DNA of 43,685 nt from Octopus bimaculoides (taxonomy: Eukaryota): the NCBI RefSeq assembly GCF_001194135.2, contig NC_068999.1, positions 3,898,095 through 3,941,779 on the forward strand, written 5' to 3'. The position numbers and the translations under genes were made by a program. Below the pieces are notes generated by a model. The model searched no databases and was not told where the DNA came from. It saw only the letters and a list, made by a program, of their open reading frames with translations. Within the stretch, counting starts at the first letter, position 1; each line of letters starts with the position of its first letter. This document shows, one piece after another, positions 20,001 to 43,685 of this stretch.

Positions 20001-23000
20001 TTTATTCCTGTATTTCCAGGTGAACCCTACGCAAAACTCACTGGTTACAACCAACAGGATGCTGTTGAAGTCTTCACTCGACATCTTGGTCACAACGTAT
20101 ACATGTGCGAATACACCCCTGTAAAACCAGGAGCACATCTCCTCTCTATATTATGGAACGGTCGCAAACTGAAAGGATCACCTTATAAAGTAAACGTGCA
20201 TCCACCGGATTATCATCAAAAGATCTTGATGGTGGATGATTTTCCTAAAAGATTACAGAACCCCACAGTTGGGAGCCGGCTTAGTCTAAAGTTCAACCCA
20301 CAAGACAGTGGAATGGGTAAGCATCTTTTATTTTCTGTTCTTGTATATCAAATAATAATTGTTTCATTAAAATGTTCTGATGTAAACAGAAAGAATGAAG
20401 AATTGCCAGGAAACTGAATCTGTAAATTGATTATAGGAAATTTTGCTGTAAACGTTTTTGCTGTAGAAAAATTCACTGTAAGAAATCTTTTTTTTTAAAT
20501 GACCTCATCCCATTCTTTTAACATTTGACATTGAACAGTCATTGAGAAGGTTGCAAGAAGCAATGAAAGAGCTTTGTCAAATAAAATCAAAGCAATCAAA
20601 TATTTGATAAATGAATGGAAATGGGCCAGTGTGTGTGTCAATTATATTGGCATAATGACTCTCCTTAGACACAACAAAATTTGTTTCAACACACGAATTC
20701 ACATAAATAATCTTGCAAACCAAATACAAAAACGAAGTTGAATAATGATCTGTCTATTTAATGCTTTCATAAAACCTTTACCATTTTTTTTTTATTTAAA
20801 AAAAATTCTGATATAATACTCTTTATCAATGTCCATGTGGCAAATTTGTCTCACGGGGAATTTGTCTTTATGGTGGATTTTCCTATACAGCAAAATTTCT
20901 TATGATGAAGTTTCAAGACACACTGTGAATTAATTAGAATTCACAGTTGTAGTTATTTTACTTCACTTAACAACACTAGTACTCTTGGGGAAAGGCATAA
21001 ACATCACAACTTGTACAAATCTTATTGAGAACATAAATGAAGTGAAAAGAAATGAAGACATTTCAATCTGGAATCGAAACCATGTTATAAATTAGTGTAT
21101 CCAAGTTGTGCTATGATGTTAACCAACCATTTCTTAGAACACAAGATATTAAATTTAAAGTTTTGAGGAAAGGAGAACAAATTTCAATAATGTTTTTCTC
21201 AAGAATATCAGGAATATGTTTGGAATGAAATAGGAACATCTGAGGATGGAAACCAGCTCAGCTCGGTGGAGGCTTACCTTTATTCTAGAACACTCAACCA
21301 GTAAAGTGATGACGATGTAGCCTGAGAGTCTAACTACTCAGTGGTCACTCAATTGTCTTCAGACCTTTAAATGGGATTGTTTGGTTTATGGACACACTAT
21401 GATGGTCAGTCCATAAACTGACCATACAGTATGATCAGTTACCTGAATGACCATCCCAATGTGGGCAATCAGTTAAATGATTGCCAAAATATTATTTAAT
21501 TAGTTTTAAAAATATTTCCAGCTACTTGAATATTAATTTTGGTTTTTTAATAGATAATATTTTATATTTCAATTTTCCAGTCTGTTTGATACTTTGTTTT
21601 GATTGACACCTTACCTATCTACCCACCTGCCTACCTACCTACATACATGCTTATCTAAACATCCACCAACCAACCAATCAATACGCCTACCAACCTATTC
21701 CCCTACTTATCTACCTACCAGTGTACACACCTTGCTAGCTACTCACTTAGCTATCCACCTATCAATCAACATACCTGGCCACTTAACAAAATACCTACCC
21801 ACTAGTCTAACCAAATTTAATTCAATTTAACTAAATTAATTTGGTTAATTACTACAAGTGAGAATATCTTCAGGGAAAGATGTACAAAGAAATTTATCAT
21901 ATTTAAAACAAAATGAAAACATAAAAACAAGAATACAGGGTACCATTAAAGTTTAAAATATATACATTAATAAAAATACAGTTATGCAAAAAGAAAAAAA
22001 TATAGTTATTCATAAATTAATATAAATAATGATTCATATTTTTGCATGGGTATGTCTGCATTATCATTATTTATATTAATTTATGAATAACTATATTTTT
22101 TTTTAAACTGTATCGATTTTTATTAATGTATATATTTTCAACTTCAATGGTAGACTGTTTCTTCCTGTTTCTATGCTTTCGTTTTGTTTTAAATACAATA
22201 AATTTCTTTGTACATCTTTCCCTGAAGATATCCTCACTTGTAGTAATTAACCAAATTAATTTAGTTAAATTAAATTAAATTTGGTTGGTTTTATGCTGCA
22301 AGTAAGGAACTGAAACAATTGTAGGTCCGGTCTCGTCAATGTTAATAAACTTTTATAAATCTTATCTCCATCACTTTTTTTTTTTTGCATAATATTTATA
22401 ATATTATATATGTATGTGCCTATATTATTAGGTATTCAACCAGTCTAATCTTAGATAATTTTATCCCTCCAAGACTTATATCCTCACTTGTACCTTGATA
22501 TATACATATATATGTACATGTATGTGTGTGTACATGTACATACACACATGCCTACCTATATGATCATACACACATGCATACTTATATATACATACACACA
22601 TATTTCCATACATAAATACATATCAACTAACATACAACCAACTGACTCACCCATTACAAATATAATCTGTAGGTGGAACAGTAAAAATATGCAAAGTTTT
22701 TCTCAAGTTTAAAAGGTGACAGTCTTTGTTATCTACATTCCAATGATGATAGAGCTTTGTATCTTTGTCAGAAACTAACTCCTTCCTCAGAAGGAGAATT
22801 TAAATAATTAAAAAGTGAAGAGAACCATACATACCTTGGTGGGCCTCTATTAAATTTGGTTCATCCAGAACCAAATTTAAATGAGGTCCAATAAGGCTGA
22901 AACCCTGATATATCAAAAATAAAACCCATGTGGCCTCTGTAAGTGTTATTAGGATTATCCCAAAATAATTTGAATTATCAAGGTTAAAGATATAATATTT

Positions 23001-26000
23001 TATGTTAAAAATATAACAAAGTTCTTCACAGGTGTTTTTCTGTAATTAAGGCAAAGCAAATATTTGTTTTGTTGTTTTTTTGCCCTTCTTTTCCTGCTTG
23101 TTGTTTGGGTTCGAACGCACAACCTTCTCTTTACTAGAACAAGAAACAATCACTAAAATTTACGTAGTGAGACCAGAAGAAACAGCAAAACGGCAACCTT
23201 GGTTGGTGCGTGGGCTCAAACGGTTTTTTAAGAAACGGCGGCAACCTCATGTCCACCAAAGAGTACTGAAGAAATCAGTCGATAAACACAAATCTGGGTG
23301 TAAGTATAGGCTCTGAGGTGGACGATGACAGAATAATGATGACAACGATGCTGAGGACGATGATGATGATTATGATGATGATGTTGATGATGATCACAGA
23401 GACACATATATGTGTGTATATGTAGACTAGCCGCTCTCTTTCTTTGGCTTGAAACCCTAAGCTATTAGATCCTTGCCAAAGCTGAGTGCATAAAATGAAA
23501 GCCCTCTCTTCCTTCCTTAGAACTATTTAGTACAAGCTTTTGTGTAAGACTCCTTTAGTGCAGATTTTAAGCTCTAGAATATTCTGGAAGAAACCAGAAA
23601 ATGCCGCATACAGCAATCAAAGCTTGAATGTAGATGTAGAGCAATTGTAGTAAACTGAAAGCAACCAAATTGATGAAGCAATGTCAAAGCAACCAAACAG
23701 ACCAATCTTGAAGCAACCAAAGTGGCCCCTTATGAAGCAACCAAATGGAATGACCAAAAAACAAATTCAGTTATTTTTTTTTTGTTATTTTTATTGCTTT
23801 GTCATATTTCATTTTTAATTTCTTATTTCCTTTCCAAGGTATGTTCCGTTTTTGTTTCAAGATTTCCTTGGCTTTTTCTAAAATTGCCAAGTCTGTAGGA
23901 CATTGCTGTGCTTTCCATAGATTTCTTTTAGACATTTTGCTGCTTTGATCTTATAGTTGTTGTTGTTCTCGTTGTTACTGTCATTGTTTATGCTGTAGCT
24001 CTTGCTGTTGTTGTCGTGCTTTAACAGTCCCAAAAACTGTTTCCATTGTTGTTGTTGAAGATGATGATGATGGTGCTGATGATGACGACGATGTTCTTCT
24101 TTGATGCCCCTCCCTCCCCCCTCTCTCTCCTTCCTCCAATCTCTTCCAGGAATCTCCTTAACTAACGCCATGACACTACTCAACACTCAACCACACACAC
24201 TTTCAGCTTCTTGTTTGCCAATCCCCTCCCCCAAAGTTCGTATTCCTTAGAGGGAAAATAGCCGGTGTTCATGCCTTTCCCAATAACGGTGGAACTGTCC
24301 CAAATACAGATTGAAACCATGTCATGATCCTTGTTGTCTTGACTTAACCCCTCAATCTACAGACATTGGGCACCACTACCACCTCTACTACCATTCTGTT
24401 ATTACAGCCACCACCGCCACCATCACTATTACCACTACCTCCACCACCTACAACAGGAATCTTCTTTCCCCTTCTTATTCCCTAATCTCCCTCCACCCCC
24501 ACAACTATTGGCCCCTTTTTTCTTACATGTCGAATAAAACATACAAATGTTGTAAAGTTTAGTGTATGTGTAAGTGTGTGTGTGTGTGTATGCATATATT
24601 GTGCCCTTCATGCAACAACCTACACACAGATATATACATATGTAAACATATATATATATATATCAAACACCCATACATACACATATACAAATGCATACAT
24701 ATATACAAATATATGCATATATATATATATATATATATACACATGTGTACAGCTATATATATATAAATATATGTACATGTATATAGATACATCTATATAT
24801 ACACATGAGTACAGCTATATATATATGTGTGTGTACATATATATATAAATGCACATACATGTGTGTACATATAAATGAAGAAATATATCTATAACGTAAA
24901 ATCTGGTATTTCTAACAGGTATGTTGACAGCTGAGTGCTTAGGTCCCTCCGGCCTAGTCCCCTGTCATGTAAACAGGAATCCAGATGGAACCCAGAGCGT
25001 GAGAGTCACCCCAAGGGAACCAGGAAAACATTTACTTCAAATCAAATACGATGAGATCCACGTTATGGGTAAATATTTCACCGTTTCTCTTTATTTCTTT
25101 CATGTCACTCTTAACCATTTAAATACCAATGCAACAGAGATAAACCCAGGTTCTGTTATACAAACTTCCCATGATACATATGTCTATATATTTTCCTGGT
25201 TTAGCCCCCATTTAAGGATCATCCGTTCCCTAGCATGAAAAAACACATGGCTGGGAACCAGTACCACAGTGATCATGTGTGTTAATGTTGATGTAATATC
25301 TATTGTATAACTAAGAAGATGATGAAACAATTGTAAACGAATGGAATAAACATCTATCCACTCACCTCACTTCTCTTATGAGTTCTACTTATAGTGGCTG
25401 TGTGGTAAGTAGCTTGCTTACCAACCACATGGTTCTGGGTTCAGTCCCACTGCGTGGCATCTTGGGCAAGTGTCTTCTACTATAGCTTTGGGCTGACCAA
25501 AACCTTGTGAGTGGATTTGGTAGATGGAAACTGAAAGTAGCCCGTCGTATGTATGTATATATATGTGTGTGTGTGTGTGTGTCTGTGTTTGTCCTCCTAG
25601 CATTACCTGTCAACCGACGTTGGTGTGTTTATGTCACTTAGCAGTTCGGCATCATGCATGTACATGATGAGGTCTTTTATTGATTGATAAGGCACATAGC
25701 TACAGATCTATTGAGGACATTTAAATGACGTGTTGGGGCAGTCATGCCTTTCTTTTGTATAGAGAATTAACAACAAAAGTGAAATACTTCCAATCAATAA
25801 TTTATGCTGTTGTTGTTGTCGTCGTTGAATGTCTAATGTTGTTTTGGTGACAGGGAGTCCATATGAACTTGATGTGGGTGTGTCAAAGCACACAGGAAAG
25901 GTCGTGGTGAGCGGACCAGGATTACAAGATGGCATCCTTGACCATTATAACAGTAATTTTATGGTAAATACTCAGAATGCTGGACCCGGAGAACTGAAAG

Positions 26001-32600: not shown

Positions 32601-35600
32601 CAAATGAAACACACACACATACACACAATATCAAACCTGAACTCACCATAGCAAGATCTGAACTGGCATCTGCATTCCTTATCTGTCGGATTTTCTCTTG
32701 TAATAAGGTGACGTTGGTCTTTAGTCTGTCACGACTCACCTTGGGTAGGAGTTGTTGACCCAACATCTGGGGGTAAAAAACATCGATTTATTTATTCATT
32801 TGAGATGATTAAACAAAAAGATACAATCTAGGTGAATATAATTTGTGTATTAAATTTTTTGGGGAAGGGAGGATTGATTAGATCGAATCCAGTGTACAAC
32901 TGGTACTTAATTTATCGACCCCGAAAGGGTGAAAGGCAAAGTTGACCTTGGCAGAATTTGAACTCAGAAGGTTAAGACAGATGAAATACCACTACGCATT
33001 TCGCCCAGCTAACATTTCTGCCAGCTTGCTGTCTTTATTTCTAGAGAAATATGGTAAGAAAAAGGTGCCATAGATTACTTTTCATCATCACCATTGTTTA
33101 ATGTCTGTTTTCCAAGCTGGCATGGGTTGGACGGTTTGATAAGAGAAGGCCAGCCAGGGAGCTGTCCAGACTCCAACTGGATGCCCTTCCTAATCCCAAC
33201 TACTTTACAGAGTGTGTTGGGTGCTATTTACATGCCGTCAGCACAGGTGCATTTATGCATCACTGACATGAATGCATTTTATGTGGCACCAGCACCTGTA
33301 AAAGACAAGTGTGCATGTATGGATAACAATAATGGTGATATCACAAGAACCAAACGAAATGCTATTATCTACAGTAAAGTTTGTAGACTGCAATAATTGT
33401 CTCCTATGTTGCAGGTCTACCTTGGTATCTAGGGTACCACATACACAAACTTACTGCATAGATCGTCTTTAACTGCCGCTCCAAACTTTCTCCAGCTTCT
33501 TTCATTCCAAGAGACATCTTTAACTGTTCGAAGAGTTTCTGAATTTCAGATAAGTTCTTGATGGCCTACAAAAAGAAACAAAACAACTCAACTGTTTTAT
33601 GCCCTTCATCACAAACAAATCATTGTTAAAAGGTACCAATGCACCCTAAATGCTTCACACAACTTCATGCTGGCCAACAAACACACCCAACTCCAAAGAG
33701 GTGCCACAAAGAACCACATAAGTAATGGTCTAAGAGGTGCAGTATACTTTAAATGTGAGTGACCGTTAGCCAGGCACCAGAATATAACAATGTTGAAATT
33801 TTAACCACCAACATCTCTGGCAAAAAGCATCACAAGGTGAGATTTCCTTGTCCTCATAAATTCTACAAAATACTCAATTCAGTAACTTCTTATCTCTAAT
33901 AGAGCTTAACTTAACTATTCTTTTTCCACACAGCTGTCACCTCTGAGTAATTAGTACTTTAGTAATATTATTAAATTAAATATGCAAATTTTCCACACCT
34001 TCTTATGTATAATATTGTACATCTAATTAGTGAGTCGCTTACTGGTATTTCAGTAAATACAACAATGTCTATACATAGCTGAAAAGTTCTAATAATATTG
34101 AACCATATCAGAGTTATCTCCCCAAATTCTTGAAATGGCTTCAATATTATTCATTGAGCTTCATATATTTTCCATAACTACATAATCATTTCTAATTAGA
34201 TCTTTGATGTTTTACTAACATAATTATTTGTATGGTGTGAACAAAAATATCAAAAATTTCAAAAAGATCTTTCCAGACAATTAAATATTTCTTTCCTCTG
34301 ATCCAATCCAACATCAACCACCCATTGCCCTCCTCAAATACTTCCAAGTTACCTTCATTACAGAAGACCAGAAATAGTTTACTCACATCATCAGCCAGTC
34401 TTCCTGTAACACACGTCATTCGTTTAGTGCTGTGTGATACACCTGAGAAGTTGGTGATGATAAACTGGCCGATATCACTTGTGTTGTGGACATGTCTGTG
34501 AAGACGAGAATGAAGGAAATGTAAAGGGACAGAAAGAAAATGGTAAAATAACAAAGAGAGCTATTTGTCAGAATTTCTGATGAAAACCAGTGGGTCTTTA
34601 TAGGGAATATTATTTTGCTGTTTGTGCAAGTGAACTAGTAGAACCACTTTCGCTGAAAGGGGTGGAGGGGAAACTACTATTTAGCAGTGGGTAAAGGACA
34701 GGCCCATAGCCTTTGTGGGTAAACAAGGAATGTAAATTAAAACTCTTTGACTCACGTGCCGGTACAGAGTTCCTGTGAATATTTAGATTGTTCAGAAGGG
34801 GGAATTGACCTCAGCTCATTGATGGGTAGCCCCACACTGATTAGGTAGACATAGTCAGGGTAAATCTGAAATGGAGAAATTATATATGAAGGCCAACTGA
34901 GACAGAGAAGGGAGGGGGGATTTTAGACATGTTAAACCAGAGAAAAATTGTGGTGTGGCTGTGTGGTTAAGAAGTTTGTTTCTCATCCACATGGGTGTAG
35001 GCTCAATCCCACTGCGTGGCACCTTGGGCGAGTTTCTTCTTCTGTAGCCTCGTCAGTGGATTTGGTAGACAGAAACTGAAAGAAGCCTGTCATGTGTGTG
35101 TGTGTGTGTGCAGGAGTGGGTGCATGGTAAGAAGGTTGCTTCCCAACCACATGGTTCCAGGTTCAGTCCCACTGCGTGGCACCTCGGGCAAGTGTCTTCT
35201 TCTAAAGCCCCAGGCCAACCAAAGCCTTGTGAGTGGATATGGTTGATGGAAACACATATAATCATATATTCATCTGATGGAAACAACTTTTTTCTAACGA
35301 TGTAATGTCTCCATTAATCAATTAAGATCATGAGCCAAACACCTTAACCACTAAGCCACTTTCCTTTACACACACACACACACACACAAAAAGGGAATCC
35401 CCATAGAAGGAATACTTCTGTTGATAGGTTTAGTGTCCCAGGGTTGACCAGTGGCTTAAACAACACCAACCAATGAAGTTGCCTGACCAATGAAAACAAA
35501 CCAAATGTGACCTACTTCGTTGGGGTTGTAGGTGACACAGTCCAGTGCCATAACTTCTGTTTTTCTAAGTTCTTGCCTGTAGACTGGCAACTGTTGCCTG

Positions 35601-38600
35601 ATCGCAGACTGAACCGTTTTCTCGATGGCACTTAACTTCTCAGCAGACATGTCTTCCTGTAACACAAATCATTCAGACATTTTATTTATATATCTGTGTG
35701 TGTGCATGTATATGTGTGTGTGTGTGTCTATGTGCTTGTAAGTGTGTGTGTATGTGTTTTTGCATCTGTATAGGCATATATCTGTAGGTCTGTGCATGTA
35801 TGTGTGTCTATGTGTGCGTGTATGCATTTGCCTGTGAATGTGTATCTGTGTCTGATACATAGTAGTAGTAGTAGTAGTTGTTGTTGTAGTAATAGTGGTA
35901 GTGGTAGTGGTAGTGTGGAGAGAATGGACTTACCAGACAGGAGAAATCAAATGTGAATTTGTGTTCCATGACTGAAGAACCAAGTTGTCGGACTTGAGAA
36001 GCAAGGATTTGTTGCAAGGCAGAGTTTAATAAATGTGTAGCCGTGTGGTTACACATACAGCCTTGTCTCACATCCTACAATTACACAAAAGAAATAGAAA
36101 TATGGAACTTATCGGCAAAGCATGGTCTGCAGGGCCTTTCTATATTGTTGGGAAGTTATGATGGTGGTCCTAGTGATATTGGTGAGGGTGACGGTAGCAG
36201 TGGCAGTGGTATTGAGGTTGATGATCATGATGGAGGGGATGGTGTTGGTGGTAGTGATGATGCTAGTAGTGGTGAGGTTGATGGTGGTGGTGGTGATGTT
36301 GGTGAGGATGACGGTGGTGGTGGTGGTGATGATGATGATGACAATGGTAGTGGTGGTGATGATGATGGTGTTGGTGGCAGTGATGATGGCGGTGGTGGTG
36401 ATGTTGGTGAGGATGACAATGGTAGTGGTGGTGATGATGATGGAATCGATGGTGGTTGTGGTTCCAAGGTTGTAGTAGTGAAGATAGTAGTGGTGATGAT
36501 GATTATGATAATGGTGATGATGCTAAGGGTGGTGGTGGTGGTGGTGGTGGTGATGAAAAACTCCTACCTGTTCCAGCTGCAAGCTAACCAAATCCTGCTT
36601 CATGAAACTGCCTTCTTGCACCTGGCCAAAATGCACTACATAATTCTGCATCTGTTGCACACTGGTTACCTGGAACTTAGCACCTGTCTTCTGTAAATAG
36701 TAAAAATAGAGGTGAGTGCAGGGGGGAGGAGTAATCTGATAGTATAATGGTAGTGAGTGTGGCAGTAGGGTCACATGTAGTAAACAGTGTGTTGTTTAAC
36801 CCTAGGTCATGCCTGATCAGGCAGATCTATGATCAAAATGATTCCAGCCATGACCAACCTGTCTTCTAGGGATATAATTAGGGTTCAGCAAAATTGCTTC
36901 ACCACATACCGAAATTTAGAAATAGCAGTTAAATACCATTCCTCTACCATTATATATCTCCCAGACAACGAGATATATCATGTCTTGGAGATATCTTATG
37001 GTAGTGGAATAGTATTTAACTGCTATTTCTAAATTTCGGTATGTGGTGAAGCAATTTTGCTGAACCTTAATTATAATTATGCTTATAATTATAAAACTTT
37101 TGTATAAGTTTACCAATAATGGTTCTTCTAACACACCGAACTACTTGGTGAAATTATTAGTTGTTAATTATTAATTTTCCCCCTATATCAGTATATATAA
37201 AACAGTTTATACAACTGGGGTGATGACTCTTAGTCTTATACACCTTATCAAGCATTATTTGTTTTATTAAAAGGGGGAGGAAAGGGATCAGAGCAACAGA
37301 AAATGTAAAATGAATAATTTACCTTTGCAACAATGTGACCCAGGTCAGACTGTTGACCTCCAGCCTCGGCATAGAAAGATGTCCTGTTTAAAAGAACAGC
37401 ACACTTGTCTCCAGCAGAAACCTTCTCAGTCAAAAAATCGTTATGGATCAAAGCCACCACGCAGCTGCCGGGGACATCGGTAAAACCTGGCAAGAATGGG
37501 GAAAGTGAAGATGTGAGAGAGACACCAGAATTGCAGGGAGAAAGTTATACATCAAGTATTAAGGGCCCAAAGATACACATGGAGAATATGGGCCCTATGG
37601 TACGTGATGCACAAAAGGGCTAAAGATACATCATCATCATCAGCATCACCATTTAATACCCATTTTCCATGCTGGCATGGGTCAGGCATTAAGGACCCAA
37701 AGACACATATGAAAAATTAAGGGTCCAGAGTTACATGTGGAAAATTAAGGGTTCATTAGTACAGCCAGAAGATTAAGGAGCCAAGGTTACATATGACACA
37801 CAAAGGGCTCAACAATACAATGGAACATTTTGGACCCAAAGGTACAAGTGGAAAATTAAGGGCTCAAAAGAACATATAGCACATAAAGAGCCCAAAGATA
37901 CAATGGAACATTAAAGGTCCTATGGTACAAGGTATATAGGGTCTAACTGTACATATGGTAAATTAAGGGTTCATAATATGAAATCTGTGCTCATTAGTCT
38001 TTAGGAAATATTTGACCAAACTGGACATTGCACAGTGTGATAGTGACCAAAGTGGGTTGGTGGGGGTGAATGCTTACCAATCATCATCATCATCATCATC
38101 AACATCATCTTTCTTTAATATATGTTTTCCATGCAGGCATGGGTTGGATGGTTTGACCAGAACTGGCAAACCGGAGTGCTGCTCTAGGTTCCAGTGTGGT
38201 TTCACTTGTTTTCTGCAGCTGCACACCCCTTCCTAACACCAACCACTTTACAGAGTCTGCTGGGTGCTTTTAACATGGTACCAGCATCATGCTGATGCCA
38301 TGTAAATGGTTCTAGCATTTAATGATGATGATGGCAAAATGGTTAGAGGCTGTGTGCTAAAATGTTTGTAGCAAAGAAAAACTGGTAAGTTTAGATCTCA
38401 AGATGTTGGACTTCACAGATGGATGAGTCAGGACGAAGAAGATGGAGTGACTTAGTGATCGTACTCTGTTGTAGATATGTTCATGTACTTTATGGACCAA
38501 CAGAATCAATACCAGTAATATACTGTGGTCCTATGAAAACTGACCTTTGTCCCAAAGGGAGGTCATCTGTGGGTCATGAAACAACAATGGACTTACTGTA

Positions 38601-40840
38601 AACACCATTAGTACTGGTGTATAGGTATTTGTAGTGGTCATCTGTGGTCAAAATGGAAGATTCCTGAAGCTTTGATATTAGGTCAGGATCCAGAAGAGCC
38701 TTTGGTACAGCTGGTTTCTCTAAACTGGGTTGAAGCTGTCAATAAGACAAACAGGAAACTATTAAACAACAACGATTATTATTATTATTAATTATTTATA
38801 GGAAAATAGCTTTTTATCATCACACTTACATTATACAGATGCATATGCATAAACACACACACACATATATACACACATATGATAAGGTGCTGGAAAGTTC
38901 CTGGCTTTTGGTAAAAGAAAATAGAAGAGGATCACTGAATTATGATTTTATTGAACATCTTCCCTTCTAAGATTCACAGATTATTGCAACGGTCCTTCAG
39001 TTTTTCTAAGCCCTGTAAAAGAACTTGGAAGGTTGGGCCTCCAACCAGGCCTTTCGTGACATTCTTAAAGCCAGGAACTTTTCAGAACCCCGTCATATGT
39101 ATGTGTGTGATGTCTGTATACTTATGTATGTATGTATGTGTGTGTGTATGTTTATGTGTGTAAGAGATAGAAGGACAGTGAGAGTGGTATGATGGTGTAT
39201 GGAAACTAAAAATGGATAGTCAGTGTAGAGGACTCTACATGGTGCATGGTTAAGATATATAGAGGACTACATGAGGGGTAAGATGTGTGAGGTGTGTAGT
39301 TGTATAGAGGGTACATGTGGTGTGAGTAAGAACATGTGGTGATGCGTTACATGTATGACAAGAGTGAAACATGGACAGCCAATGTGGAATATGATTTACC
39401 TGTCGTTTTAAAAAGTCTTCCTGAATTTTATCAATGTCCACCTGGTAACCTCTCTCCCATGCAATATTGCACAGAACATCGACAGGGACCGGTCGACCAA
39501 ACCGGCCCTCAGCTAACTGCATGATGTTTTCTGGAAAAACAAGAAGAATCTTTCTGACAAGGGAAAATAAATTCTAAGAATATGGTCAGATTAACCACAG
39601 TATGGGAGATTTACTTCAACATGGGTTAGAGGTGGCAAAATTTGTAGGTAGTTAGACAACTAACCAAAGTAACAAGGGTTCAAATCTCATCTGTCTGTAA
39701 TGTCTATGGCCAAGACAATACTTAACTCTCAATAATCCACTTTAGCAAAATTTAAATTTTCTTCTCCTGTTTTAAACCCTGCTGAAGTCACAATTTTTTT
39801 CTTTTCACAGTTGAGTGAATTTGCTAACATTAATCACTGAACCGTGACATACAAGAGAAGTCTAGTCAGTTGCTGACCACAAAAATGCAATTACAGTTAG
39901 TAACAAGGTTTGAACTCACGACCAAGAAGTCAGTAGACTAACATCTTAACCAGACGACTAACACAGTATACACACATATTCATAACTTAATAAACACAAT
40001 AAAGGTCTCTGAGAATTAAAATAAAACATTTACAAACCATCAGTGAAATGTTGAGAACCAAGTTTGTTGAGAAGTCTTTTGAAAGAATGGTAGCCATCCT
40101 GTAACATCTCCAAGTAATGCCTCTCGCTTTGGTCCAGAATCTCTTGGATCTGTCAACAGATTATGGAATATTTTTGGGGGTTTTTTCTACCAAAATATCT
40201 AAAATTTTCTAGAATATTTCAAACAATGAATTAGTTTGATATTTAAAATATAATATCATGTGTGTGTATATTTGTATACCAGGGACGTGCCACCTGGGTA
40301 GGCAAGGTAGGCAGTGCCTACCCTGAATGAAATAGATCCATAGTAACATTTTCCCTTTATGGCATTATAAAACACACACACACACACACACACACAGATG
40401 AAATTTATTCTAAGCATTATTTACCATTGTTTTATCTTGGAAGCATTCAGGGAAGACATCTTCCTGTAATGATAAAAACAGAATTTTTGTTCAATACATT
40501 TATCAGAATATTTCCACCCCCATCCCATGTTCCCCCAATTCTACAATATGTCCCTCCTACCCACATTTCCGTAATCAACAATGTGTCCCCGTAACCAAAG
40601 TCCAATGCCTGTTCTAACATAAAAGAAATAACAACAACAGAAGCAAGAATCCAAAACCAATCTAACATAGAATCCAGCTTACCAATGATTCCGCGACATC
40701 ATTGACCAATGATCCAAAGAATCCAGCTGGGGCTTGGAAGATGGTGTGGGACTGGTGGAGAGCTCGGTGGATGACATGGCGCAGTTTGTGTCTGGAGAAA
40801 GAATGAGAAACGGATTACACATATCTTATGAAGACTGAGC

Positions 40841-40876
<36 letters not shown>

Positions 40877-43190
40877 CTTATAGTCTGGGTTGTTCAGTGA
40901 CATCTATTTAGTGTCAAGATAGATTCAATACTTGGTAAAATATATACACCCCATTCACATACACTTAGAATAATATACACATCAACACACACAGACATAA
41001 ATAAATATAACACACACATATACATAAGGATACACAGGTATCAAAATACATAATAAACACATTGAATATGCAAATACATATATAACACACATGCACACAA
41101 TTGTAACACACACACACATATTACGCACATACACACACATGTATATACACAAACACAGGTACAACACAGTGATCTGTGCTGGAACTGAACCCAGTACCTT
41201 CACATTACATCTCACAGCAACGACAGATGCTAACAAGTCACTCACCCTAAGCCATCCCTGCTAGGTAACAAGCCATCACCGATGGATATTGTTGACATCC
41301 TTATATGGTCAGCAACAATTCTGTAGGCCTCGTCTCTGCCACCAACATCAGCCATTCCAGTCTTACCTTTATATTGAGCAGAACCAGTCACCTACAACAA
41401 AACAAACACAACCATTTTTCGACTCAGAGATGATGCCAAGCTGTAGGCAAACAAGTTCCAGTAAAAAAAAAAAACCCAAAATAGTTTCAATGCTTTAAAA
41501 CATTTACAAACCATCAGTGAAATGTTGAGAAGTCTTTCGAAAGAATGGTAACCACCCTGTAACATCTCCAAGTAATGCCTTTCACTTTGGTCCAGAATTT
41601 CTTGGATCTGTCAACAGATTATGGAATATTTTCTAAGGTTTTCCAGAATCAGACAAACTTATCTGCCTCCTTTCTGCTCTTTGAAGAAAAAAGTGGAGTG
41701 TGTATGCTCAAAGAATACACTTCTCATTTCTTCAAGGAATGGTACTGTCTCAGACACAAGAACTCATCTCTCTTCAAACCATACAAAAATATATTTTATT
41801 TTAGAAATTTTAAAAAATGTTTGTTTTTAGTTTCTGCCAACACTGGCCAGCACCAGCTTCTTCCAATTCTAATTGGTTTTTTTTTTTTTTTTTTTTTTTG
41901 AGTAAATAGCTTACCTTGTGAATTCTGTTAAATATTCCTTGAAACAAATCTGAGCTGTAATTGTCTTTGGAACCAGAAAGAACTGAACACAACCGCTCCA
42001 GTCCAAGTCCCGTGTCTACATGTTGTTTGGGGAGTTTCTGCAAACTTTGGTCAGTCATTCTATCAAAGACAATAAGGAAGAACGGATGCAGGTCTTTATA
42101 AAATGTGTGTGGTGTGTGAGTGTGCGCATGTGAGTGTACGTCTGTGCATTATTGCATCTGTCACTATCTCGTACTGCTCAAGGGCCAGTATTGCTTTATT
42201 TACATCCCTGTCACATAGTAATTCTTCAAAAGGGCACTGACAGAATAAGTATCAGACTCAAAATAAACCCCGGCGTCCACTTTGCTGAGTGGTTGGTGTT
42301 AGGAAGGGCATCCAGCTATAAAAATCCTGCCAAAACAGTCAGCGACGTCTGGTGCAGGCTTCTGCCTGGCCGGTTCCTGTCAAACCGTTCCACCCATGCC
42401 AGCATGGAAGGCGAACGTTAAACGATGATGGTGATAGTGATGATATATTTTTAACTGATGACACAGAATGAACCGTGGACACACAGCGGAGTCTAAAAGA
42501 AAATCTACTTTTAATATCATTAATAAAAATCGGAAGTGGCGCTGCAATTACGAAATTGTTATGGAAATTAAATTTCGATGCAGTGGAGCAAAAAGATTCG
42601 TCACTCTTAAAATATAAAGTGATTGGTCAGGAATCACTTCACTCCAGAATGAACTCGTCACCGTCTGACGGGTTATCTCCCTTCGTTAAACGACACTGGC
42701 AAAGAGTTACTTCCCTTCGATAACTAATGCGAAGAAATCCGCTAAAAAAAGTGTTTCGTGGAATCTGCAGAAAATGGTGACTTCCTGGTAGATTCGAACG
42801 TCAACCTACAGATAAAAAAACGATCTTAAAATTAAGATGGTGTGGTCACTATTGGAACGTCCTAAATTATAACTCTGCTGGATCAGGGTTTAACTAACAC
42901 TGAACAACATCAAAAACAACAAAACATGTTGGCCAAACTACCACATGTTAAAATGGACTGATCACGTGACAGAGCACCACAGCCATGATGTAACTCACCG
43001 ATTGTACTCCATAAATACCAGATTCCATATTTCAACAACATCCGAAGATCCAGTGTTAACCAAATGAGCAGCGTTTCTATTGCCAATGTGGTCGTAATGG
43101 ATTTCTGTGCAAGGACCACATGGCCCTGTGTTGCCCATTTCCCAGAAATTGTCCTTCACATCAAATGGTAAAATCTTCTCTGCAGGAATC
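29407..43190 (-). CDS. AARS2: Alanyl-tRNA synthetase, probably mitochondrial; 5'-truncated at window edge (gene span, spliced)
   Basis: 19 GT-AG exons join in frame (2422 nt). Motifs [81 protein letters not shown]. Heavy divergence of the tRNA-recognition helices and C-Ala domain argues for the mitochondrial paralogue (inference). Confidence 0.93.
29673..29795 (-). mobile_element. SINE family A, partial
   Basis: ggcacaaggccagcaatttt...ccccagtattcaaccggtacttatt...gaaagg..aaaagcaaagtc shared with other copies. Confidence 0.7.
30338..30612 (-). mobile_element. 3' end of RTE-like LINE (5'-truncated) with (GAT)n tail
   Basis: Minus strand encodes [22 protein letters not shown] then a 3'UTR with GTTAGGAAGGGCATCCAGC and a ttaaatgatgatgatg tail. 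Confidence 0.72.
30959..31054 (-). CDS. AARS2: AlaRS exon ([17 protein letters not shown]...AVVTPK)
   Basis: ctccacag| and |gtaagt; phase 0-0; C-Ala-like beta strands ending V-x-x-P-K. Confidence 0.82.
31374..31451 (-). CDS. AARS2: AlaRS exon ([26 protein letters not shown])
   Basis: ttttcag| and |gtaaga; phase 0-0. Confidence 0.8.
32265..32580 (+). mobile_element. tRNA-headed SINE family D
   Basis: A-box tggctcagtggttaga, B-box gagttcaattc, body gtgttcttgagcaagacactttatttcac...ccagttcactcaactgta; related head at ~17020-17090. Confidence 0.78.
32647..32766 (-). CDS. AARS2: AlaRS exon ([16 protein letters not shown]...SSDLAM)
   Basis: ccccag| and |gtgagt; phase 0-0. Confidence 0.85.
32860..33030 (-). 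mobile_element. SINE family A
   Basis: actggtacttaatttatcgaccccgaaagggtgaaaggcaaagttgacc...gaatttgaactcagaa shared with other copies. Confidence 0.82.
33083..33300 (-). mobile_element. RTE-tail family copy
   Basis: catcatcaccattgtttaatgtctgttttccaagctggcatgggttggacggtttga...ctggatgcccttcctaa; further minus copies at ~31940-32060, 37628-37685, 38080-38290. Confidence 0.78.
33455..33565 (-). CDS. AARS2: AlaRS exon ([16 protein letters not shown]...LKTIYA)
   Basis: tttgtag| and |gtaagt; phase 0-0; helical/coiled-coil character. Confidence 0.85.
34387..34495 (-). CDS. AARS2: AlaRS exon ([14 protein letters not shown]...[13 protein letters not shown])
   Basis: ttcacag| and |gtgagt; phase 2-0. 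Confidence 0.93.
34756..34865 (-). CDS. AARS2: AlaRS exon ([12 protein letters not shown]...YSQELCTGT)
   Basis: atttcag| and |gtgagt; phase 0-2. Confidence 0.92.
34952..35250 (+). mobile_element. Two tandem SINE family B copies joined by (TG)n
   Basis: Copies at ~34952-35090 and ~35112-35250, each with the head and cactgcgtggcacct.gggc.ag body. Confidence 0.82.
35516..35656 (-). CDS. AARS2: AlaRS exon ([15 protein letters not shown]...VTYNPNE)
   Basis: gttacag| and |gtaggt; phase 0-0. Confidence 0.9.
35934..36074 (-). CDS. AARS2: AlaRS editing-domain exon ([20 protein letters not shown]...QLGS...FTFDFSCL)
   Basis: ttgtag| and |gtaagt; phase 0-0; HxxxH motif. Confidence 0.95.
36160..36555. 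repeat. (GGT/GAT)n compound trinucleotide array
   Basis: Generates spurious Gly/Asp-, Val/Met- and Pro/Ser-rich ORFs. Confidence 0.9.
36568..36690 (-). CDS. AARS2: AlaRS exon ([12 protein letters not shown]...YVVHFG...LQLEQ)
   Basis: tttacag| and |gtagga; phase 0-0. Confidence 0.92.
36873..37075. repeat. Inverted repeat (foldback), ~95-bp arms, 13-nt spacer
   Basis: 55-bp perfect stem core; both strands give the ORF text [18 protein letters not shown]. Confidence 0.95.
37323..37486 (-). CDS. AARS2: AlaRS exon ([12 protein letters not shown]...[24 protein letters not shown])
   Basis: ttgccag| and |gtaaat; phase 1-0. Confidence 0.95.
37555..37975. repeat. Degenerate minisatellite (AAATTAAGGGCCCAAAGATACACATGG-like)
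   Basis: Recurring ttaaggg, cccaaag and tacacat/tacaatgg units. Confidence 0.7.
38597..38735 (-). CDS. AARS2: AlaRS exon (LQPSLEKP...[17 protein letters not shown])
   Basis: ttgacag| and |gtaagt; phase 0-1; TDD..KY motif. Confidence 0.88.
38878..39097 (-). mobile_element. Mariner-derived MITE with transposase C-terminal remnant
   Basis: ~30-bp imperfect TIRs (atatgataaggtgctggaaagttcctggcttt vs rc of aaagccaggaacttttcagaaccccgtcatat), TA-flanked; minus strand reads [12 protein letters not shown].(frameshift)VNLRREDVQ*, like mariner GIEKL..RW.KCV.L.G.YVE*. Confidence 0.75.
39400..39530 (-). CDS. AARS2: AlaRS exon ([20 protein letters not shown]...ERGYQVD...FLKRQ)
   Basis: tttccag| and |gtaaat; phase 1-0. 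Confidence 0.88.
40038..40149 (-). CDS. AARS2: AlaRS exon ([37 protein letters not shown])
   Basis: tgacag| and |gtttgt; phase 0-1; corresponds to the EIINEEE..FL.TL..G helix. Confidence 0.88.
40425..40463 (-). CDS. AARS2: AlaRS 39-nt microexon ([13 protein letters not shown])
   Basis: cattacag| and |gtaaat; phase 0-0; fills the expected GDAYPEL position. Confidence 0.8.
40683..40791 (-). CDS. AARS2: AlaRS exon ([11 protein letters not shown]...[13 protein letters not shown])
   Basis: tctccag| and |gtaagc; phase 2-0; aligns to YVLRRILRRA...FFATLVDVV of AlaRS. Confidence 0.92.
41246..41391 (-). CDS. AARS2: AlaRS exon ([10 protein letters not shown]...[10 protein letters not shown]...[10 protein letters not shown])
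   Basis: ttgtag| and |gtgagt; phase 0-2. Confidence 0.95.
41512..41607 (-). pseudogene. Duplicated copy of AARS2 exon 40038-40149 (pseudo-exon or cassette exon)
   Basis: Same sequence with 6 transitions and a 16-nt deletion; both splice sites and some flanking intron retained. Confidence 0.85.
41915..42059 (-). CDS. AARS2: AlaRS exon ([23 protein letters not shown]...NRIHK)
   Basis: tgatag| and |gtaagc; phase 2-0; motif 3. Confidence 0.96.
42270..42445 (+). mobile_element. RTE-tail family copy, opposite orientation
   Basis: ggttggtgttaggaagggcatccagctataaaaa...cccatgccagcatggaaggcgaacgttaaacgatgatg; a similar plus copy lies at 26045-26145. Confidence 0.8.
42999..43190 (-). CDS. AARS2: AlaRS exon ([19 protein letters not shown]...[13 protein letters not shown])
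   Basis: catccag| and |gtgagt on minus; phase 2-2; motif-2 region. Confidence 0.96.
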
Positions 43191-43509
43191 CTGGATGAAG
43201 TAAGAACAAGAACTTACAGCTACTTCATATCAATACTGTTTAGCTGATCTGGTAACATGGACCACACACATACAGATATATACAACACTCATATGTTGAA
43301 ATCAATAGGAGTGACCATCATCGTGGAGTAGGAGTGGAGGGACGTTGTAATTAATGAGAGGGAGATAAACTGGAGTAAAAACTCGACACAAACACAAGAG
43401 ATGGTGAGATCTGAAGGTACGACACAGGGGTCACAGGAGGGGAAAAAAGAATTGAATATGGAGCCTTTCAGAAGAGACAGAGAAAAAGTTAAGAAAGAGA
43501 GAGTAAGGT

Positions 43510-43670
43510 GTAGGAGTGGCTGTGTGGTAAGTAGCTTGCTTATGAACCGCATGATTTCCGGTTCAGTCCTACTGCGTGGCTCCTTGGGCAAGTGTCTTCT
43601 ACTATAACCTCGGGCCGACCAAAGCCTTGTGAGTGGATTTGGTAGATGGAAACTGAAAGAAGCCCATTTA
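43510..43670 (+). mobile_element. SINE family B, near-intact
   Basis: ggagtggctgtgtggtaagtagcttgct...cggttcagtcctactgcgtggc.ccttgggcaagtgtcttctactataacctcgggccgaccaaagccttgtgagtggatttggtagatggaaactgaaagaagccc. Confidence 0.88.
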
Positions 43671-43685
43671 TATATATATATATAT

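What the first reader, a model, noticed from the sequence alone, without database searches (positions are those of the whole stretch)
41495..41640. Displaced AARS2 exon duplicate whose 16-nt deletion makes it frame-compatible with its new intron
Seen: exon 40038-40149 (112 nt, phase 0-1) has a second copy at 41512-41607, four exons upstream in transcript order, not in tandem. The copy keeps the same acceptor (tgacag|), the same donor (|gtttgt) and some flanking intron, so the duplication was at DNA level. A 16-nt deletion between two tgttgaga microhomologies turns it into a stop-free 96-nt phase 0-0 exon ([32 protein letters not shown]). The host intron, between ...NRIHK and VTGSAQ..., is phase 0. 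Of 6 substitutions, 4 are synonymous. Inference: it may be a recently born in-frame cassette exon that inserts a second copy of a tRNA-contacting helix just after motif 3, or a silent pseudo-exon. The numbers are too small to prove selection.
Basis: partly seen in the sequence, partly recalled or inferred. Interest (0 to 1): 0.7.

Follow-up and report, generated by a model that had tools for sequence, protein, structure and literature searches.

The report
Old intronic relic of AlaRS exon
An intron of the octopus mitochondrial-type alanyl-tRNA synthetase gene holds a shortened second copy of one of the gene's own exons; it looks spliceable in this species, but comparison with other octopuses shows it is at least about 34 million years old and decaying like ordinary intron DNA, so it is most likely an unused pseudo-exon.

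Summary
Window 41496-41632 (minus strand) copies the exon at 40038-40149 plus about 25 nt of upstream and 16 nt of downstream intron (blastn E = 7e-45). A 16-nt deletion between two TTCTCAACA repeats leaves a stop-free 96-nt unit in a phase-0 intron.

The window is Octopus bimaculoides, and the gene is a mitochondrial-type alanine-tRNA ligase that NCBI labels "cytoplasmic".

The "recently born cassette exon" reading is not supported:
- O. sinensis and O. vulgaris carry the copy in the same intron with the same deletion, so it predates their split from O. bimaculoides about 34 Mya. Argonauta lacks it.
- In O. sinensis and O. vulgaris a retroelement-like insertion of about 560 nt sits after intron base +4 and changes the donor to GTTTAT.
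- In O. vulgaris a +1 T makes the copy 97 nt with an internal TGA.
- Between species the copy diverges about as much as ordinary intron (5.1% against an intron mean of 9.1%; 20-26% of intron windows are as conserved).
- None of six annotated octopod proteins includes it.
- Polarised with outgroups, only two of the six differences arose in the O. bimaculoides copy.

No RNA data could be reached, so low-level inclusion in O. bimaculoides is untested.

The parts
41496..41632 (-). Whole duplicated segment (137 nt): 25 nt of intron, the shortened exon copy and 16 nt of intron. Weaker homology runs about 12 nt further upstream.
   Evidence: blastn against parent 40022-40174; 7-sequence alignment
41512..41607 (-). 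Copy of the exon (pseudo-exon): 96 nt, open in the parent's frame, [34 protein letters not shown] at 41609-41608 and GT at 41511-41510.
41523..41531 (-). The single remaining TTCTCAACA repeat, which marks the junction of the 16-nt deletion
   Evidence: overlap of the two blastn HSPs; alignment
41392..41914 (-). Host intron (523 nt, phase 0) between E_b and E_c
41915..42059 (-). Exon E_b (145 nt; ...GLGLERL...FNRIHK, motif 3 region). Strong donor AAG|gtaagc.
41246..41391 (-). Exon E_c (146 nt; [12 protein letters not shown]...). T-rich acceptor.
40038..40149 (-). Parent exon E_f (112 nt, phase 0 to 1; [37 protein letters not shown])
   Evidence: 100% match to XP_052830844.1
40022..40174 (-). 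Source segment of the duplication in the parent (153 nt of clear identity)
40049..40073 (-). The two 9-nt direct repeats TTCTCAACA (40065-40073 and 40049-40057), 16 nt apart, between which the copy lost 16 nt

Best explanation
This is a non-tandem, DNA-level duplicate of about 165 bp. It comprises one exon of the Octopus bimaculoides mitochondrial-type alanyl-tRNA synthetase gene with short intron flanks, inserted 1.46 kb upstream into the phase-0 intron that follows the motif-3 exon.

Origin and history. The copy arose in the Octopus lineage after the split from Argonauta and before the O. bimaculoides / O. vulgaris-sinensis split (about 34 Mya or earlier). Before that split it lost 16 nt by slippage or microhomology-mediated repair between two TTCTCAACA repeats. 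Since then it has drifted as intron DNA. A retroelement-like insertion landed in its donor in the O. vulgaris/sinensis ancestor, and O. vulgaris later gained a frameshift.

State in O. bimaculoides. The copy happens still to have an open, frame-compatible 96 nt and the parent's own, weak, splice sites. The spliceosome most likely skips it in favour of the strong E_b donor and E_c acceptor, with at most noise-level inclusion.

Shown: the sequence facts, the shared deletion, the insertion, the frameshift, intron-like divergence and absence from annotated proteins.

Inferred: one-step templated insertion as the mechanism of origin, and skipping in vivo.
For: 1. Age and single origin. The same copy with the same 16-nt deletion sits in the orthologous intron of O. 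sinensis (L001 7459-7554) and O. vulgaris (L003 36282-36378). It is absent from the Argonauta hians locus by blastn and tblastn.

2. Decay.
- O. vulgaris copy: 97 nt (+1 T), reading ...LQDGLPFF*. Inclusion would give a premature stop.
- O. sinensis and O. vulgaris share a 571/555-nt insertion after intron base +4, so the donor is GTTTAT (5/9 consensus matches against 6/9).
- The insertion has a 175-aa open frame followed by a (GAT)n tail.

3. No constraint.
- Copy region 7/137 = 5.1% divergence, against intron 9.1% and exons 5.9%; 20-26% of intron windows are as conserved.
- Between O. sinensis and O. vulgaris the copy has 1 indel in 96 nt. The local intron rate is 36 gap openings in 4653 nt, and about 2.9 kb of CDS has no frameshift (Fisher p = 0.03 against CDS).

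4. Polarisation with other species.
- Only GAG>GAA (synonymous) and GAT>GGT (D>G) arose in the O. bimaculoides copy.
- E>K and AGT>AGC arose in the parent exon.

5. No annotated protein of O. bimaculoides (two models), O. sinensis, O. vulgaris (two models) or Argonauta has residues inserted at NRIHK|V.

6. The coincidences are cheap.
- 10 of 15 introns in the model are phase 0.
- About one random indel in three restores a length divisible by 3 (inference).
- P(stop-free) under neutrality is 0.73-0.90.

7. Weak splice sites. Pyrimidine content is 0.61 and the donor is ATG|gtttgt, flanked by a strong E_b donor (8/9) and a T-rich E_c acceptor.
Against: In O. bimaculoides nothing that inclusion needs is broken. 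The 23-nt acceptor and 9-nt donor windows are identical to those of a constitutively used exon, the frame is open, and the phase fits.

The 25 nt upstream of the acceptor are unchanged in all three species' copies. About 2.3 changes would be expected at the intron rate, so P(0) is about 0.1. This is a post-hoc observation and could also reflect gene conversion from the parent.

The copy's divergence (5.1%) is nominally below the intron mean, though not significantly.

No RNA-seq or cDNA could be examined. Three protein searches found no transcript-derived octopus fragments at all, so absence of inclusion rests only on gene annotations.

The O. vulgaris +1 T comes from an ONT-based assembly. 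It is judged real only because the same assembly has no frameshift in about 2.9 kb of this gene's CDS.
Confidence: 0.8

Rival explanations
1. It is a lineage-specific in-frame cassette exon in O. bimaculoides. The intact copy would be included in some tissues and add 32 residues (a second copy of part of the tRNA-recognition-domain helix) between the residues equivalent to human AARS1 K272 and G273, giving a variant mitochondrial AlaRS.
For: - Splice-site windows are identical to the parent's, and the 96-nt frame is open in a phase-0 intron.
- O. sinensis also keeps an open 96-nt frame.
- The insertion point lies next to a loop that shows some length variation among AlaRS homologues; 2-3 of 240 have insertions of 6 aa or more there.
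Against: - The frame is not conserved in O. vulgaris, and the donor is altered in two species.
- Divergence is intron-like.
- It is absent from every annotated isoform.
- The last 7 residues (NISLM...) are read in a shifted frame, so the duplicated helix would be truncated.
- The homologues with insertions at this site may be gene-model artefacts at a conserved intron position.
Confidence: 0.06
2. It is a regulatory pseudo-exon. The copy would be kept as a splicing decoy or as an unproductive-splicing (NMD) switch that tunes AlaRS mRNA levels, not for its coding content.
For: - In O. vulgaris inclusion would create a premature stop.
- The acceptor-side 25 nt are unchanged in all three species.
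Against: - The outcome of inclusion differs between species: in-frame in two, a premature stop in one. No single regulatory logic is therefore conserved.
- Known poison exons are typically highly conserved (established knowledge), whereas this copy diverges like intron.
- A retroelement-like insertion in the donor was tolerated.
Confidence: 0.04
3. The end state is the same, but the origin took two steps. A 1.46-kb tandem duplication spanning E_c to E_f was followed by deletion of the first unit's E_c, E_d and E_e, rather than a one-step templated insertion.
For: The present order (copy, then E_c-E_d-E_e-parent) and both junctions are exactly what that path would leave (reasoned). The copy-to-parent distance, 1458 nt, would be the length of the tandem unit.
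Against: - It needs two events.
- The intermediate would add 406 nt (not a multiple of 3) of exons to an essential gene.
- No remnant of the other three exons is found in the host intron.
- Argonauta introns do not align, so no empty site can be reconstructed.
Confidence: 0.1

Closest known systems
Unannotated intronic exon duplicates (exon-homologous sequences inside introns of the same gene), as catalogued in human, fly and worm (PMC9013439, which cites the 2002 survey of exon duplications)
   Same: It is a sequence homologous to an exon of its own gene. It lies in an intron on the same strand, is not part of annotated transcripts, and keeps splice-site-like flanks. That survey found 4,027 such intronic targets in human, with only some showing weak, tissue-specific expression.
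   Different: It is not adjacent to its parent: three exons lie between them. It is shortened by 16 nt, so it is not interchangeable with the parent. Here its age and its decay can be read from three species.
Tandem exon duplication giving mutually exclusive exons (for example SCN alpha exon 5a/5b, Dscam1 clusters)
   Same: It arose by DNA-level duplication of an exon together with its splice sites.
   Different: It is not tandem, not of equal length (96 against 112 nt) and not of equal phase (0-0 against 0-1). It could only add to the parent, never replace it. No transcript evidence exists.
Pseudo-exons: intronic sequences with splice-site-like signals that are normally skipped (for example the DMD pseudo-exons reviewed in PMC7175933)
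   Same: It is an intronic unit with usable AG and GT and exon-like length that the annotated mRNA skips. It could be activated by small changes.
   Different: Most described pseudo-exons are random or transposon-derived intron sequence. This one derives from a genuine exon and starts with authentic, though weak, splice sites.

Membership tests
Intronic exon-derived duplicate / pseudo-exon | Significant homology to an exon of the same gene, on the same strand | tested here: met
   110 nt at 94.5% (E = 7e-45) plus 36 nt at 100%
Intronic exon-derived duplicate / pseudo-exon | Lies wholly within an intron and is absent from annotated transcripts or proteins | tested here: met
   It lies inside intron 41914-41392. 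Six annotated octopod proteins have no insertion at the junction.
Intronic exon-derived duplicate / pseudo-exon | Evolves without coding constraint | tested here: met
   Frameshift and stop in O. vulgaris, insertion in the donor in two species, divergence within the intron background, and an intron-like indel rate
Functional cassette (alternative) exon | Usable 3' and 5' splice sites | tested here: met
   In O. bimaculoides the sites are identical to those of the constitutive parent exon. They are weakened to GTTTAT in O. sinensis and O. vulgaris.
Functional cassette (alternative) exon | Frame preservation and open frame conserved across species | tested here: not met
   96 nt and open in O. 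bimaculoides and O. sinensis; 97 nt with an internal TGA in O. vulgaris
Functional cassette (alternative) exon | Sequence conservation above the intron background | tested here: not met
   5.1% divergence; 20-26% of 137-nt intron windows are as conserved or more so
Functional cassette (alternative) exon | Inclusion junctions seen in RNA | not testable with these tools
   No RNA-seq access. Protein searches with the junction peptide found no octopus-derived fragment.
Tandem exon duplication / mutually exclusive exons | Copies adjacent, with no other exon between them | tested here: not met
   E_c, E_d and E_e lie between copy and parent
Tandem exon duplication / mutually exclusive exons | Same length class and phase, so that either copy can substitute for the other | tested here: not met
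   96 nt phase 0-0 against 112 nt phase 0-1
Poison (NMD-coupled) exon | Inclusion introduces a premature stop, conserved across species | tested here: not met
   A premature stop arises only in O. vulgaris; inclusion is in-frame in the other two species
Exonised transposable element | The sequence derives from a repeat family | tested here: not met
   Its only homologue in the window and in the four loci is the gene's own exon. A genome-wide copy number could not be checked.
Class II alanyl-tRNA synthetase (host gene) | tRNA-synt_2c catalytic/recognition domain and tRNA_SAD editing-domain motif | tested here: met
   PF01411 E = 1.6e-158 and PF07973 E = 4.5e-8; human AARS1 catalytic fragment 4xeo E = 2e-144
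Mitochondrial AlaRS (AARS2-type) as opposed to cytoplasmic | N-terminal targeting extension; orthology to AARS2 rather than AARS1 | tested here: inconclusive
   The first 35 residues hold 12 basic and 0 acidic residues. There is no DHHA1 hit, as in vertebrate mitochondrial entries. The NJ tree places it outside the pan-metazoan cytoplasmic clade but not inside the chordate mitochondrial clade. NCBI names it 'cytoplasmic'.

The most novel reading that the evidence does not exclude
Only in O. bimaculoides, where the copy is still intact, it would be used as a tissue-restricted in-frame cassette exon. The product would be a mitochondrial AlaRS isoform with a 32-residue helical insert right after motif 3. 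That would be a case of an old, drifting exon relic being recruited in one lineage while it decays in its sisters.
Probability: 0.05. Interest if true: 0.45.

Novelty: new member of a known kind. Interest (0 to 1): 0.15.

Why it matters
The biological weight is small. Exon-derived relics in introns are common, and this one shows no sign of use.

Its value is as a clean worked example. A copy that looks well adapted in one genome (same splice sites, open frame, right phase, mostly synonymous differences) turns out to be a neutral relic at least 34 million years old once two sister genomes and an outgroup are consulted. It also shows that counting synonymous against non-synonymous differences between a copy and its functional parent is misleading unless the changes are polarised.

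If RNA data did show inclusion in O. bimaculoides, it would be a modestly interesting case of late recruitment of an old pseudo-exon in an essential enzyme.

Tried and rejected
1. Transcript evidence through the protein collections.
- Three searches were run: a 229-aa query containing the copy, a 637-aa exon model, and a 129-aa junction peptide.
- The first and third found no octopus-derived entry. The second found only annotated full-length proteins.
- The searches appear to return only proteins of about 0.7-1.75 times the query length (my inference from the hit lengths). This explains why one search missed the octopus protein.

2. Global MAFFT alignment of introns for the background divergence was distorted by large lineage-specific insertions. 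It was replaced by collinear local HSPs.

3. An apparent third copy in O. sinensis and odd E_b/E_c secondary hits were an artefact. The file L001.fa also held the Argonauta locus, so those hits are the Argonauta orthologous exons.

4. P0241 (XP_014790754.1, 978 aa against 945) looked like a possible +32-aa isoform. Its extra 33 residues are intron read-through upstream of exon 43190-42999, not the copy.

5. Assembly artefact was rejected. The copy is present in three independently assembled species.

6. Structured RNA, or a gene on the other strand, was rejected. Rfam hits are far below gathering scores and there is no plus-strand ORF.

7. Tolerance of the insertion site. Indels of 6 aa or more at the site occur in only 2-3 of 240 homologues, and these may be annotation errors. 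This is not used as support.

8. Structure prediction of an inclusion isoform was not run. The window lacks the N-terminal ~190 residues of the catalytic domain, and a model would not bear on whether the exon is used.
Full report
WHAT IS THERE

The minus strand of the window carries most of an alanine-tRNA ligase gene. I read the exons directly and built a 15-exon model. Every boundary is AG/GT and the model has no stop codon. Exons in transcript order:

| Exon | Window coordinates |
|---|---|
| E_a | 43190-42999 |
| E_b | 42059-41915 |
| E_c | 41391-41246 |
| E_d | 40791-40683 |
| E_e | 40463-40425 |
| E_f (parent) | 40149-40038 |
| E_g | 39530-39400 |
| 8 | 38735-38597 |
| 9 | 37486-37323 |
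| 10 | 36690-36568 |
| 11 | 36074-35934 |
| 12 | 35656-35516 |
| 13 | 34865-34756 |
| 14 | 34495-34387 |
| 15 | 33565-33455 |

The 637-aa translation is 100% identical over its full length to Octopus bimaculoides XP_052830844.1 (P0121). The window is therefore O. bimaculoides, and it matches assembly GCA_001194135.2, CM046619.1.

- blastn of 41301-41800 against the whole window finds only the parent exon region. Copy 41523-41632 matches 40065-40174 (110 nt, 94.5%, E = 7e-45). Copy 41496-41531 matches 40022-40057 (36 nt, 100%).
- The copy exon is 41607-41512 (96 nt) and the parent exon is 40149-40038 (112 nt).
- The 25 nt before the acceptor and the 16 nt after the donor are identical in the two. 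Intron was therefore copied along with the exon, and the event was at DNA level.
- The missing 16 nt lie between two 9-nt direct repeats, TTCTCAACA (parent 40065-40073 and 40049-40057). One repeat remains in the copy at 41523-41531. This is the signature of slippage or microhomology-mediated deletion.
- The copy is open in the parent's frame, and the last seven codons are read in a shifted frame (...LLNISLM).
- The host intron (41914-41392) is phase 0, and three exons separate copy and parent.
- All six substitutions are transitions. Four are synonymous.

GENE IDENTITY

- Pfam gives tRNA-synt_2c (E = 1.6e-158) and tRNA_SAD, with no DHHA1 hit.
- The best solved relative is the human AARS1 catalytic fragment (4xeo, E = 2e-144). 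In that alignment the host intron falls between the residues equivalent to human K272 and G273, just after the helix that follows motif 3.
- NCBI calls the protein "cytoplasmic". Three features suggest otherwise. It has an N-terminal extension with 12 basic and no acidic residues in the first 35. It lacks a DHHA1 match, like the vertebrate mitochondrial entries. In a distance tree it sits in a lophotrochozoan clade outside the tight pan-metazoan cytoplasmic clade.
- "AARS2-like" is therefore plausible but not proven.

COMPARATIVE EVIDENCE

I fetched the orthologous loci of O. sinensis (L001), Argonauta hians (L002) and O. vulgaris (L003).

| Species | Copy | Length | Frame | Donor |
|---|---|---|---|---|
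| O. bimaculoides | window 41607-41512 | 96 nt | open | GTTTGT |
| O. sinensis | L001 7459-7554 | 96 nt | open (one S>R change) | GTTTAT |
| O. vulgaris | L003 36282-36378 | 97 nt (+1 T) | ...LQDGLPFF*, shifts the downstream frame | GTTTAT |
| Argonauta hians | none; parent only at L002 10945-11055 | - | - | - |

- Both Octopus species have the copy in the same intron with the same 16-nt deletion.
- Argonauta shows no trace of a second copy in the host intron or elsewhere in 30 kb, by blastn with word size 7 or by tblastn.
- The duplication and the deletion therefore predate the O. bimaculoides / (O. vulgaris + O. sinensis) split, put at about 34 Mya (PMC10700109). They postdate the split from Argonauta, or the copy was lost there.
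- O. sinensis and O. vulgaris share an insertion of 571/555 nt after intron base +4 of the copy's donor. It has an apparent target-site duplication (GATGGTTT), a 175-aa open frame ending in a stop, and a (GAT)n tail. I read it as a 5'-truncated retroelement. This is an inference: the only Pfam hit is a sub-threshold DUF6451 match.
- That insertion changes the donor from GTTTGT to GTTTAT, losing the +5 G.
- The O. vulgaris assembly is ONT-based (PMC10700109). However, all 21 genuine exons of this gene align to the O. sinensis protein with no frameshift over about 2.9 kb. The +1 T is therefore probably real.

IS THE COPY CONSTRAINED?

- From collinear local alignments, O. bimaculoides against O. 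sinensis shows 9.1% divergence in introns and 5.9% in exons. The 137-nt copy region shows 7 mismatches (5.1%). 20% of intron windows of the same size are at least as conserved; the figure is 26% against O. vulgaris. That is not significant.
- Between O. sinensis and O. vulgaris, non-coding DNA at this locus has 36 gap openings in 4653 nt, while CDS has no frameshift. The copy's 1 indel in 96 nt fits the intron rate (0.74 expected) and not the CDS rate (Fisher p = 0.03).
- With Argonauta and the other species as reference, only two of the six copy/parent differences arose in the O. bimaculoides copy: GAG>GAA (synonymous) and GAT>GGT (D>G).
- AGT>AGC and GAA>AAA (E>K) arose in the O. bimaculoides parent exon. 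GAA>GAG arose in the parent of all three Octopus species. One site is ambiguous.
- The excess of synonymous differences therefore reflects selection on the parent, not on the copy.
- Counting changes on the copy lineages across the three species by hand from the alignment gives about 2-3 synonymous changes, 3 non-synonymous changes, 1 frameshift and 1 disrupted donor.

HOW SURPRISING IS THE "FIT"?

- 10 of 15 introns in the model are phase 0.
- About one random indel in three gives a length divisible by 3 (inference).
- A 96-nt former ORF stays stop-free with probability 0.73-0.90 after 2-6 random substitutions.
- The joint coincidence is about 1 in 5 to 1 in 6.

SPLICING LIKELIHOOD

- The copy's 23-nt acceptor window and 9-nt donor window are identical to the parent's, so any position-weight score is the same for both.
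- These are among the weakest sites in the gene: pyrimidine fraction 0.61 at -20..-3, and donor ATG|gtttgt with 6/9 consensus matches.
- The competing E_b donor (AAG|gtaagc, 8/9) and the T-rich E_c acceptor are strong.
- I infer that skipping is favoured.

ANNOTATION AND TRANSCRIPT EVIDENCE

- None of the annotated proteins has residues inserted at NRIHK|V. These are O. bimaculoides XP_052830844.1 and XP_014790754.1, O. sinensis XP_036367012.1, O. vulgaris CAI9736688.1 and CAI9736689.1, and Argonauta GAB1605404.1.
- The two Logan cephalopod entries, P0124 and P0125, have none either.
- Searches with peptides containing the copy found no octopus-derived fragment at all. Direct RNA evidence was out of reach, and this remains the main gap.

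OTHER POSSIBILITIES

- Nothing in Rfam reaches even a third of a gathering score in 39800-42300, and the plus strand has no ORF across the copy.
- A conserved poison-exon role is unlikely, because the consequence of inclusion differs between species.
- A two-step origin (a 1.46-kb tandem duplication, then an internal deletion) would leave exactly the present arrangement. It needs an out-of-frame intermediate in an essential gene and leaves no remnant, so I rank it below a one-step templated insertion.

PLACE AMONG KNOWN THINGS

Unannotated exon-homologous sequences in introns are a known and abundant class. One survey found 4,027 such targets in human, with only some showing weak, tissue-specific expression (PMC9013439).

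This case differs from classic tandem or mutually exclusive duplicates. It is displaced by three exons and shortened, so it could only add to the parent and never substitute for it. It is a new member of a known kind, of low interest, unless RNA data show real inclusion in O. bimaculoides.

VERDICT

"Recently born cassette exon" is not supported, and "silent pseudo-exon" is supported. Confidence is about 0.8 that this is an unused relic at least 34 million years old.

Noticed in passing
window 43191-43685 and beyond; L004 2626-3913: Both O. bimaculoides gene models lack the roughly 49 residues that O. sinensis, O. vulgaris and Argonauta have between ...GDYFK and IPAE... (P0122 residues 138-186, part of the catalytic domain). 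XP_014790754.1 fills the hole with intron read-through (APYSILFSPPVTPVSYLQISPSL..., window about 43467-43354). A 1288-nt run of N in the assembly abuts the window's high end. The exon is most likely lost in that gap, which would make this an assembly or annotation defect rather than biology.
   Followed up: partly
L001 7559-8129; L003 about 36383-36937: This is the retroelement-like insertion shared by O. sinensis and O. vulgaris and absent from O. bimaculoides. It has a 175-aa open frame, a stop, a (GAT)n tail, an apparent 8-nt target-site duplication (GATGGTTT) and a sub-threshold Pfam DUF6451 hit. The two species' copies are 95.5% identical.
   Followed up: partly
L003 51674-51793: Both O. 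vulgaris protein models (CAI9736688.1 and CAI9736689.1) omit a 40-residue exon ([16 protein letters not shown]...SNLAM). That exon is present and intact in the O. vulgaris genome (100% tblastn match to P0122 residues 823-862). This is either in-frame skipping or an annotation omission.
   Followed up: no
window 25393-25543, 34968-35049, 35115-35265, 43515-43665; L001 about 10725-10935: A dispersed repeat of about 150 nt (74-89% identity between copies) contains GGTTCAGTCCCACTGCGTGGCA-like motifs. It is probably a SINE. One copy is inserted in the O. sinensis intron just downstream of the parent exon and is absent from O. bimaculoides.
   Followed up: no
window 36873-36967 / 36981-37075, and 21809-21933 / 22162-22286: Two near-perfect inverted repeats: 95 nt at 94% with a 13-nt spacer, inside the AlaRS intron between exons 37486-37323 and 36690-36568; and 125 nt at 94% with a 228-nt spacer. 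They would form long hairpins in pre-mRNA. They may be MITE-like elements, and could be substrates for the A-to-I editing that is widespread in cephalopods.
   Followed up: no
window 40049-40073 (and the orthologous parent exons in L001 and L003): The functional parent exon still carries the two 9-nt TTCTCAACA direct repeats, 16 nt apart, in all three Octopus species. The same frameshifting 16-nt slippage deletion could therefore recur in the essential exon. In Argonauta the second repeat is imperfect.
   Followed up: partly
L001 6901-12000 against L003: O. sinensis and O. vulgaris differ by about 5% in substitutions, plus 36 gap openings, over 4.6 kb of this locus. That is high for a pair said to have split about 2.5 Mya. 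It may reflect long-read assembly errors in non-coding DNA or an older split.
   Followed up: no
window 36100-36560: A long imperfect trinucleotide-repeat tract, (GAT/GGT)n on the plus strand, gives His/Thr/Pro-rich open frames of 79-137 codons on the minus strand inside an AlaRS intron. It looks like low-complexity sequence rather than coding sequence.
   Followed up: no
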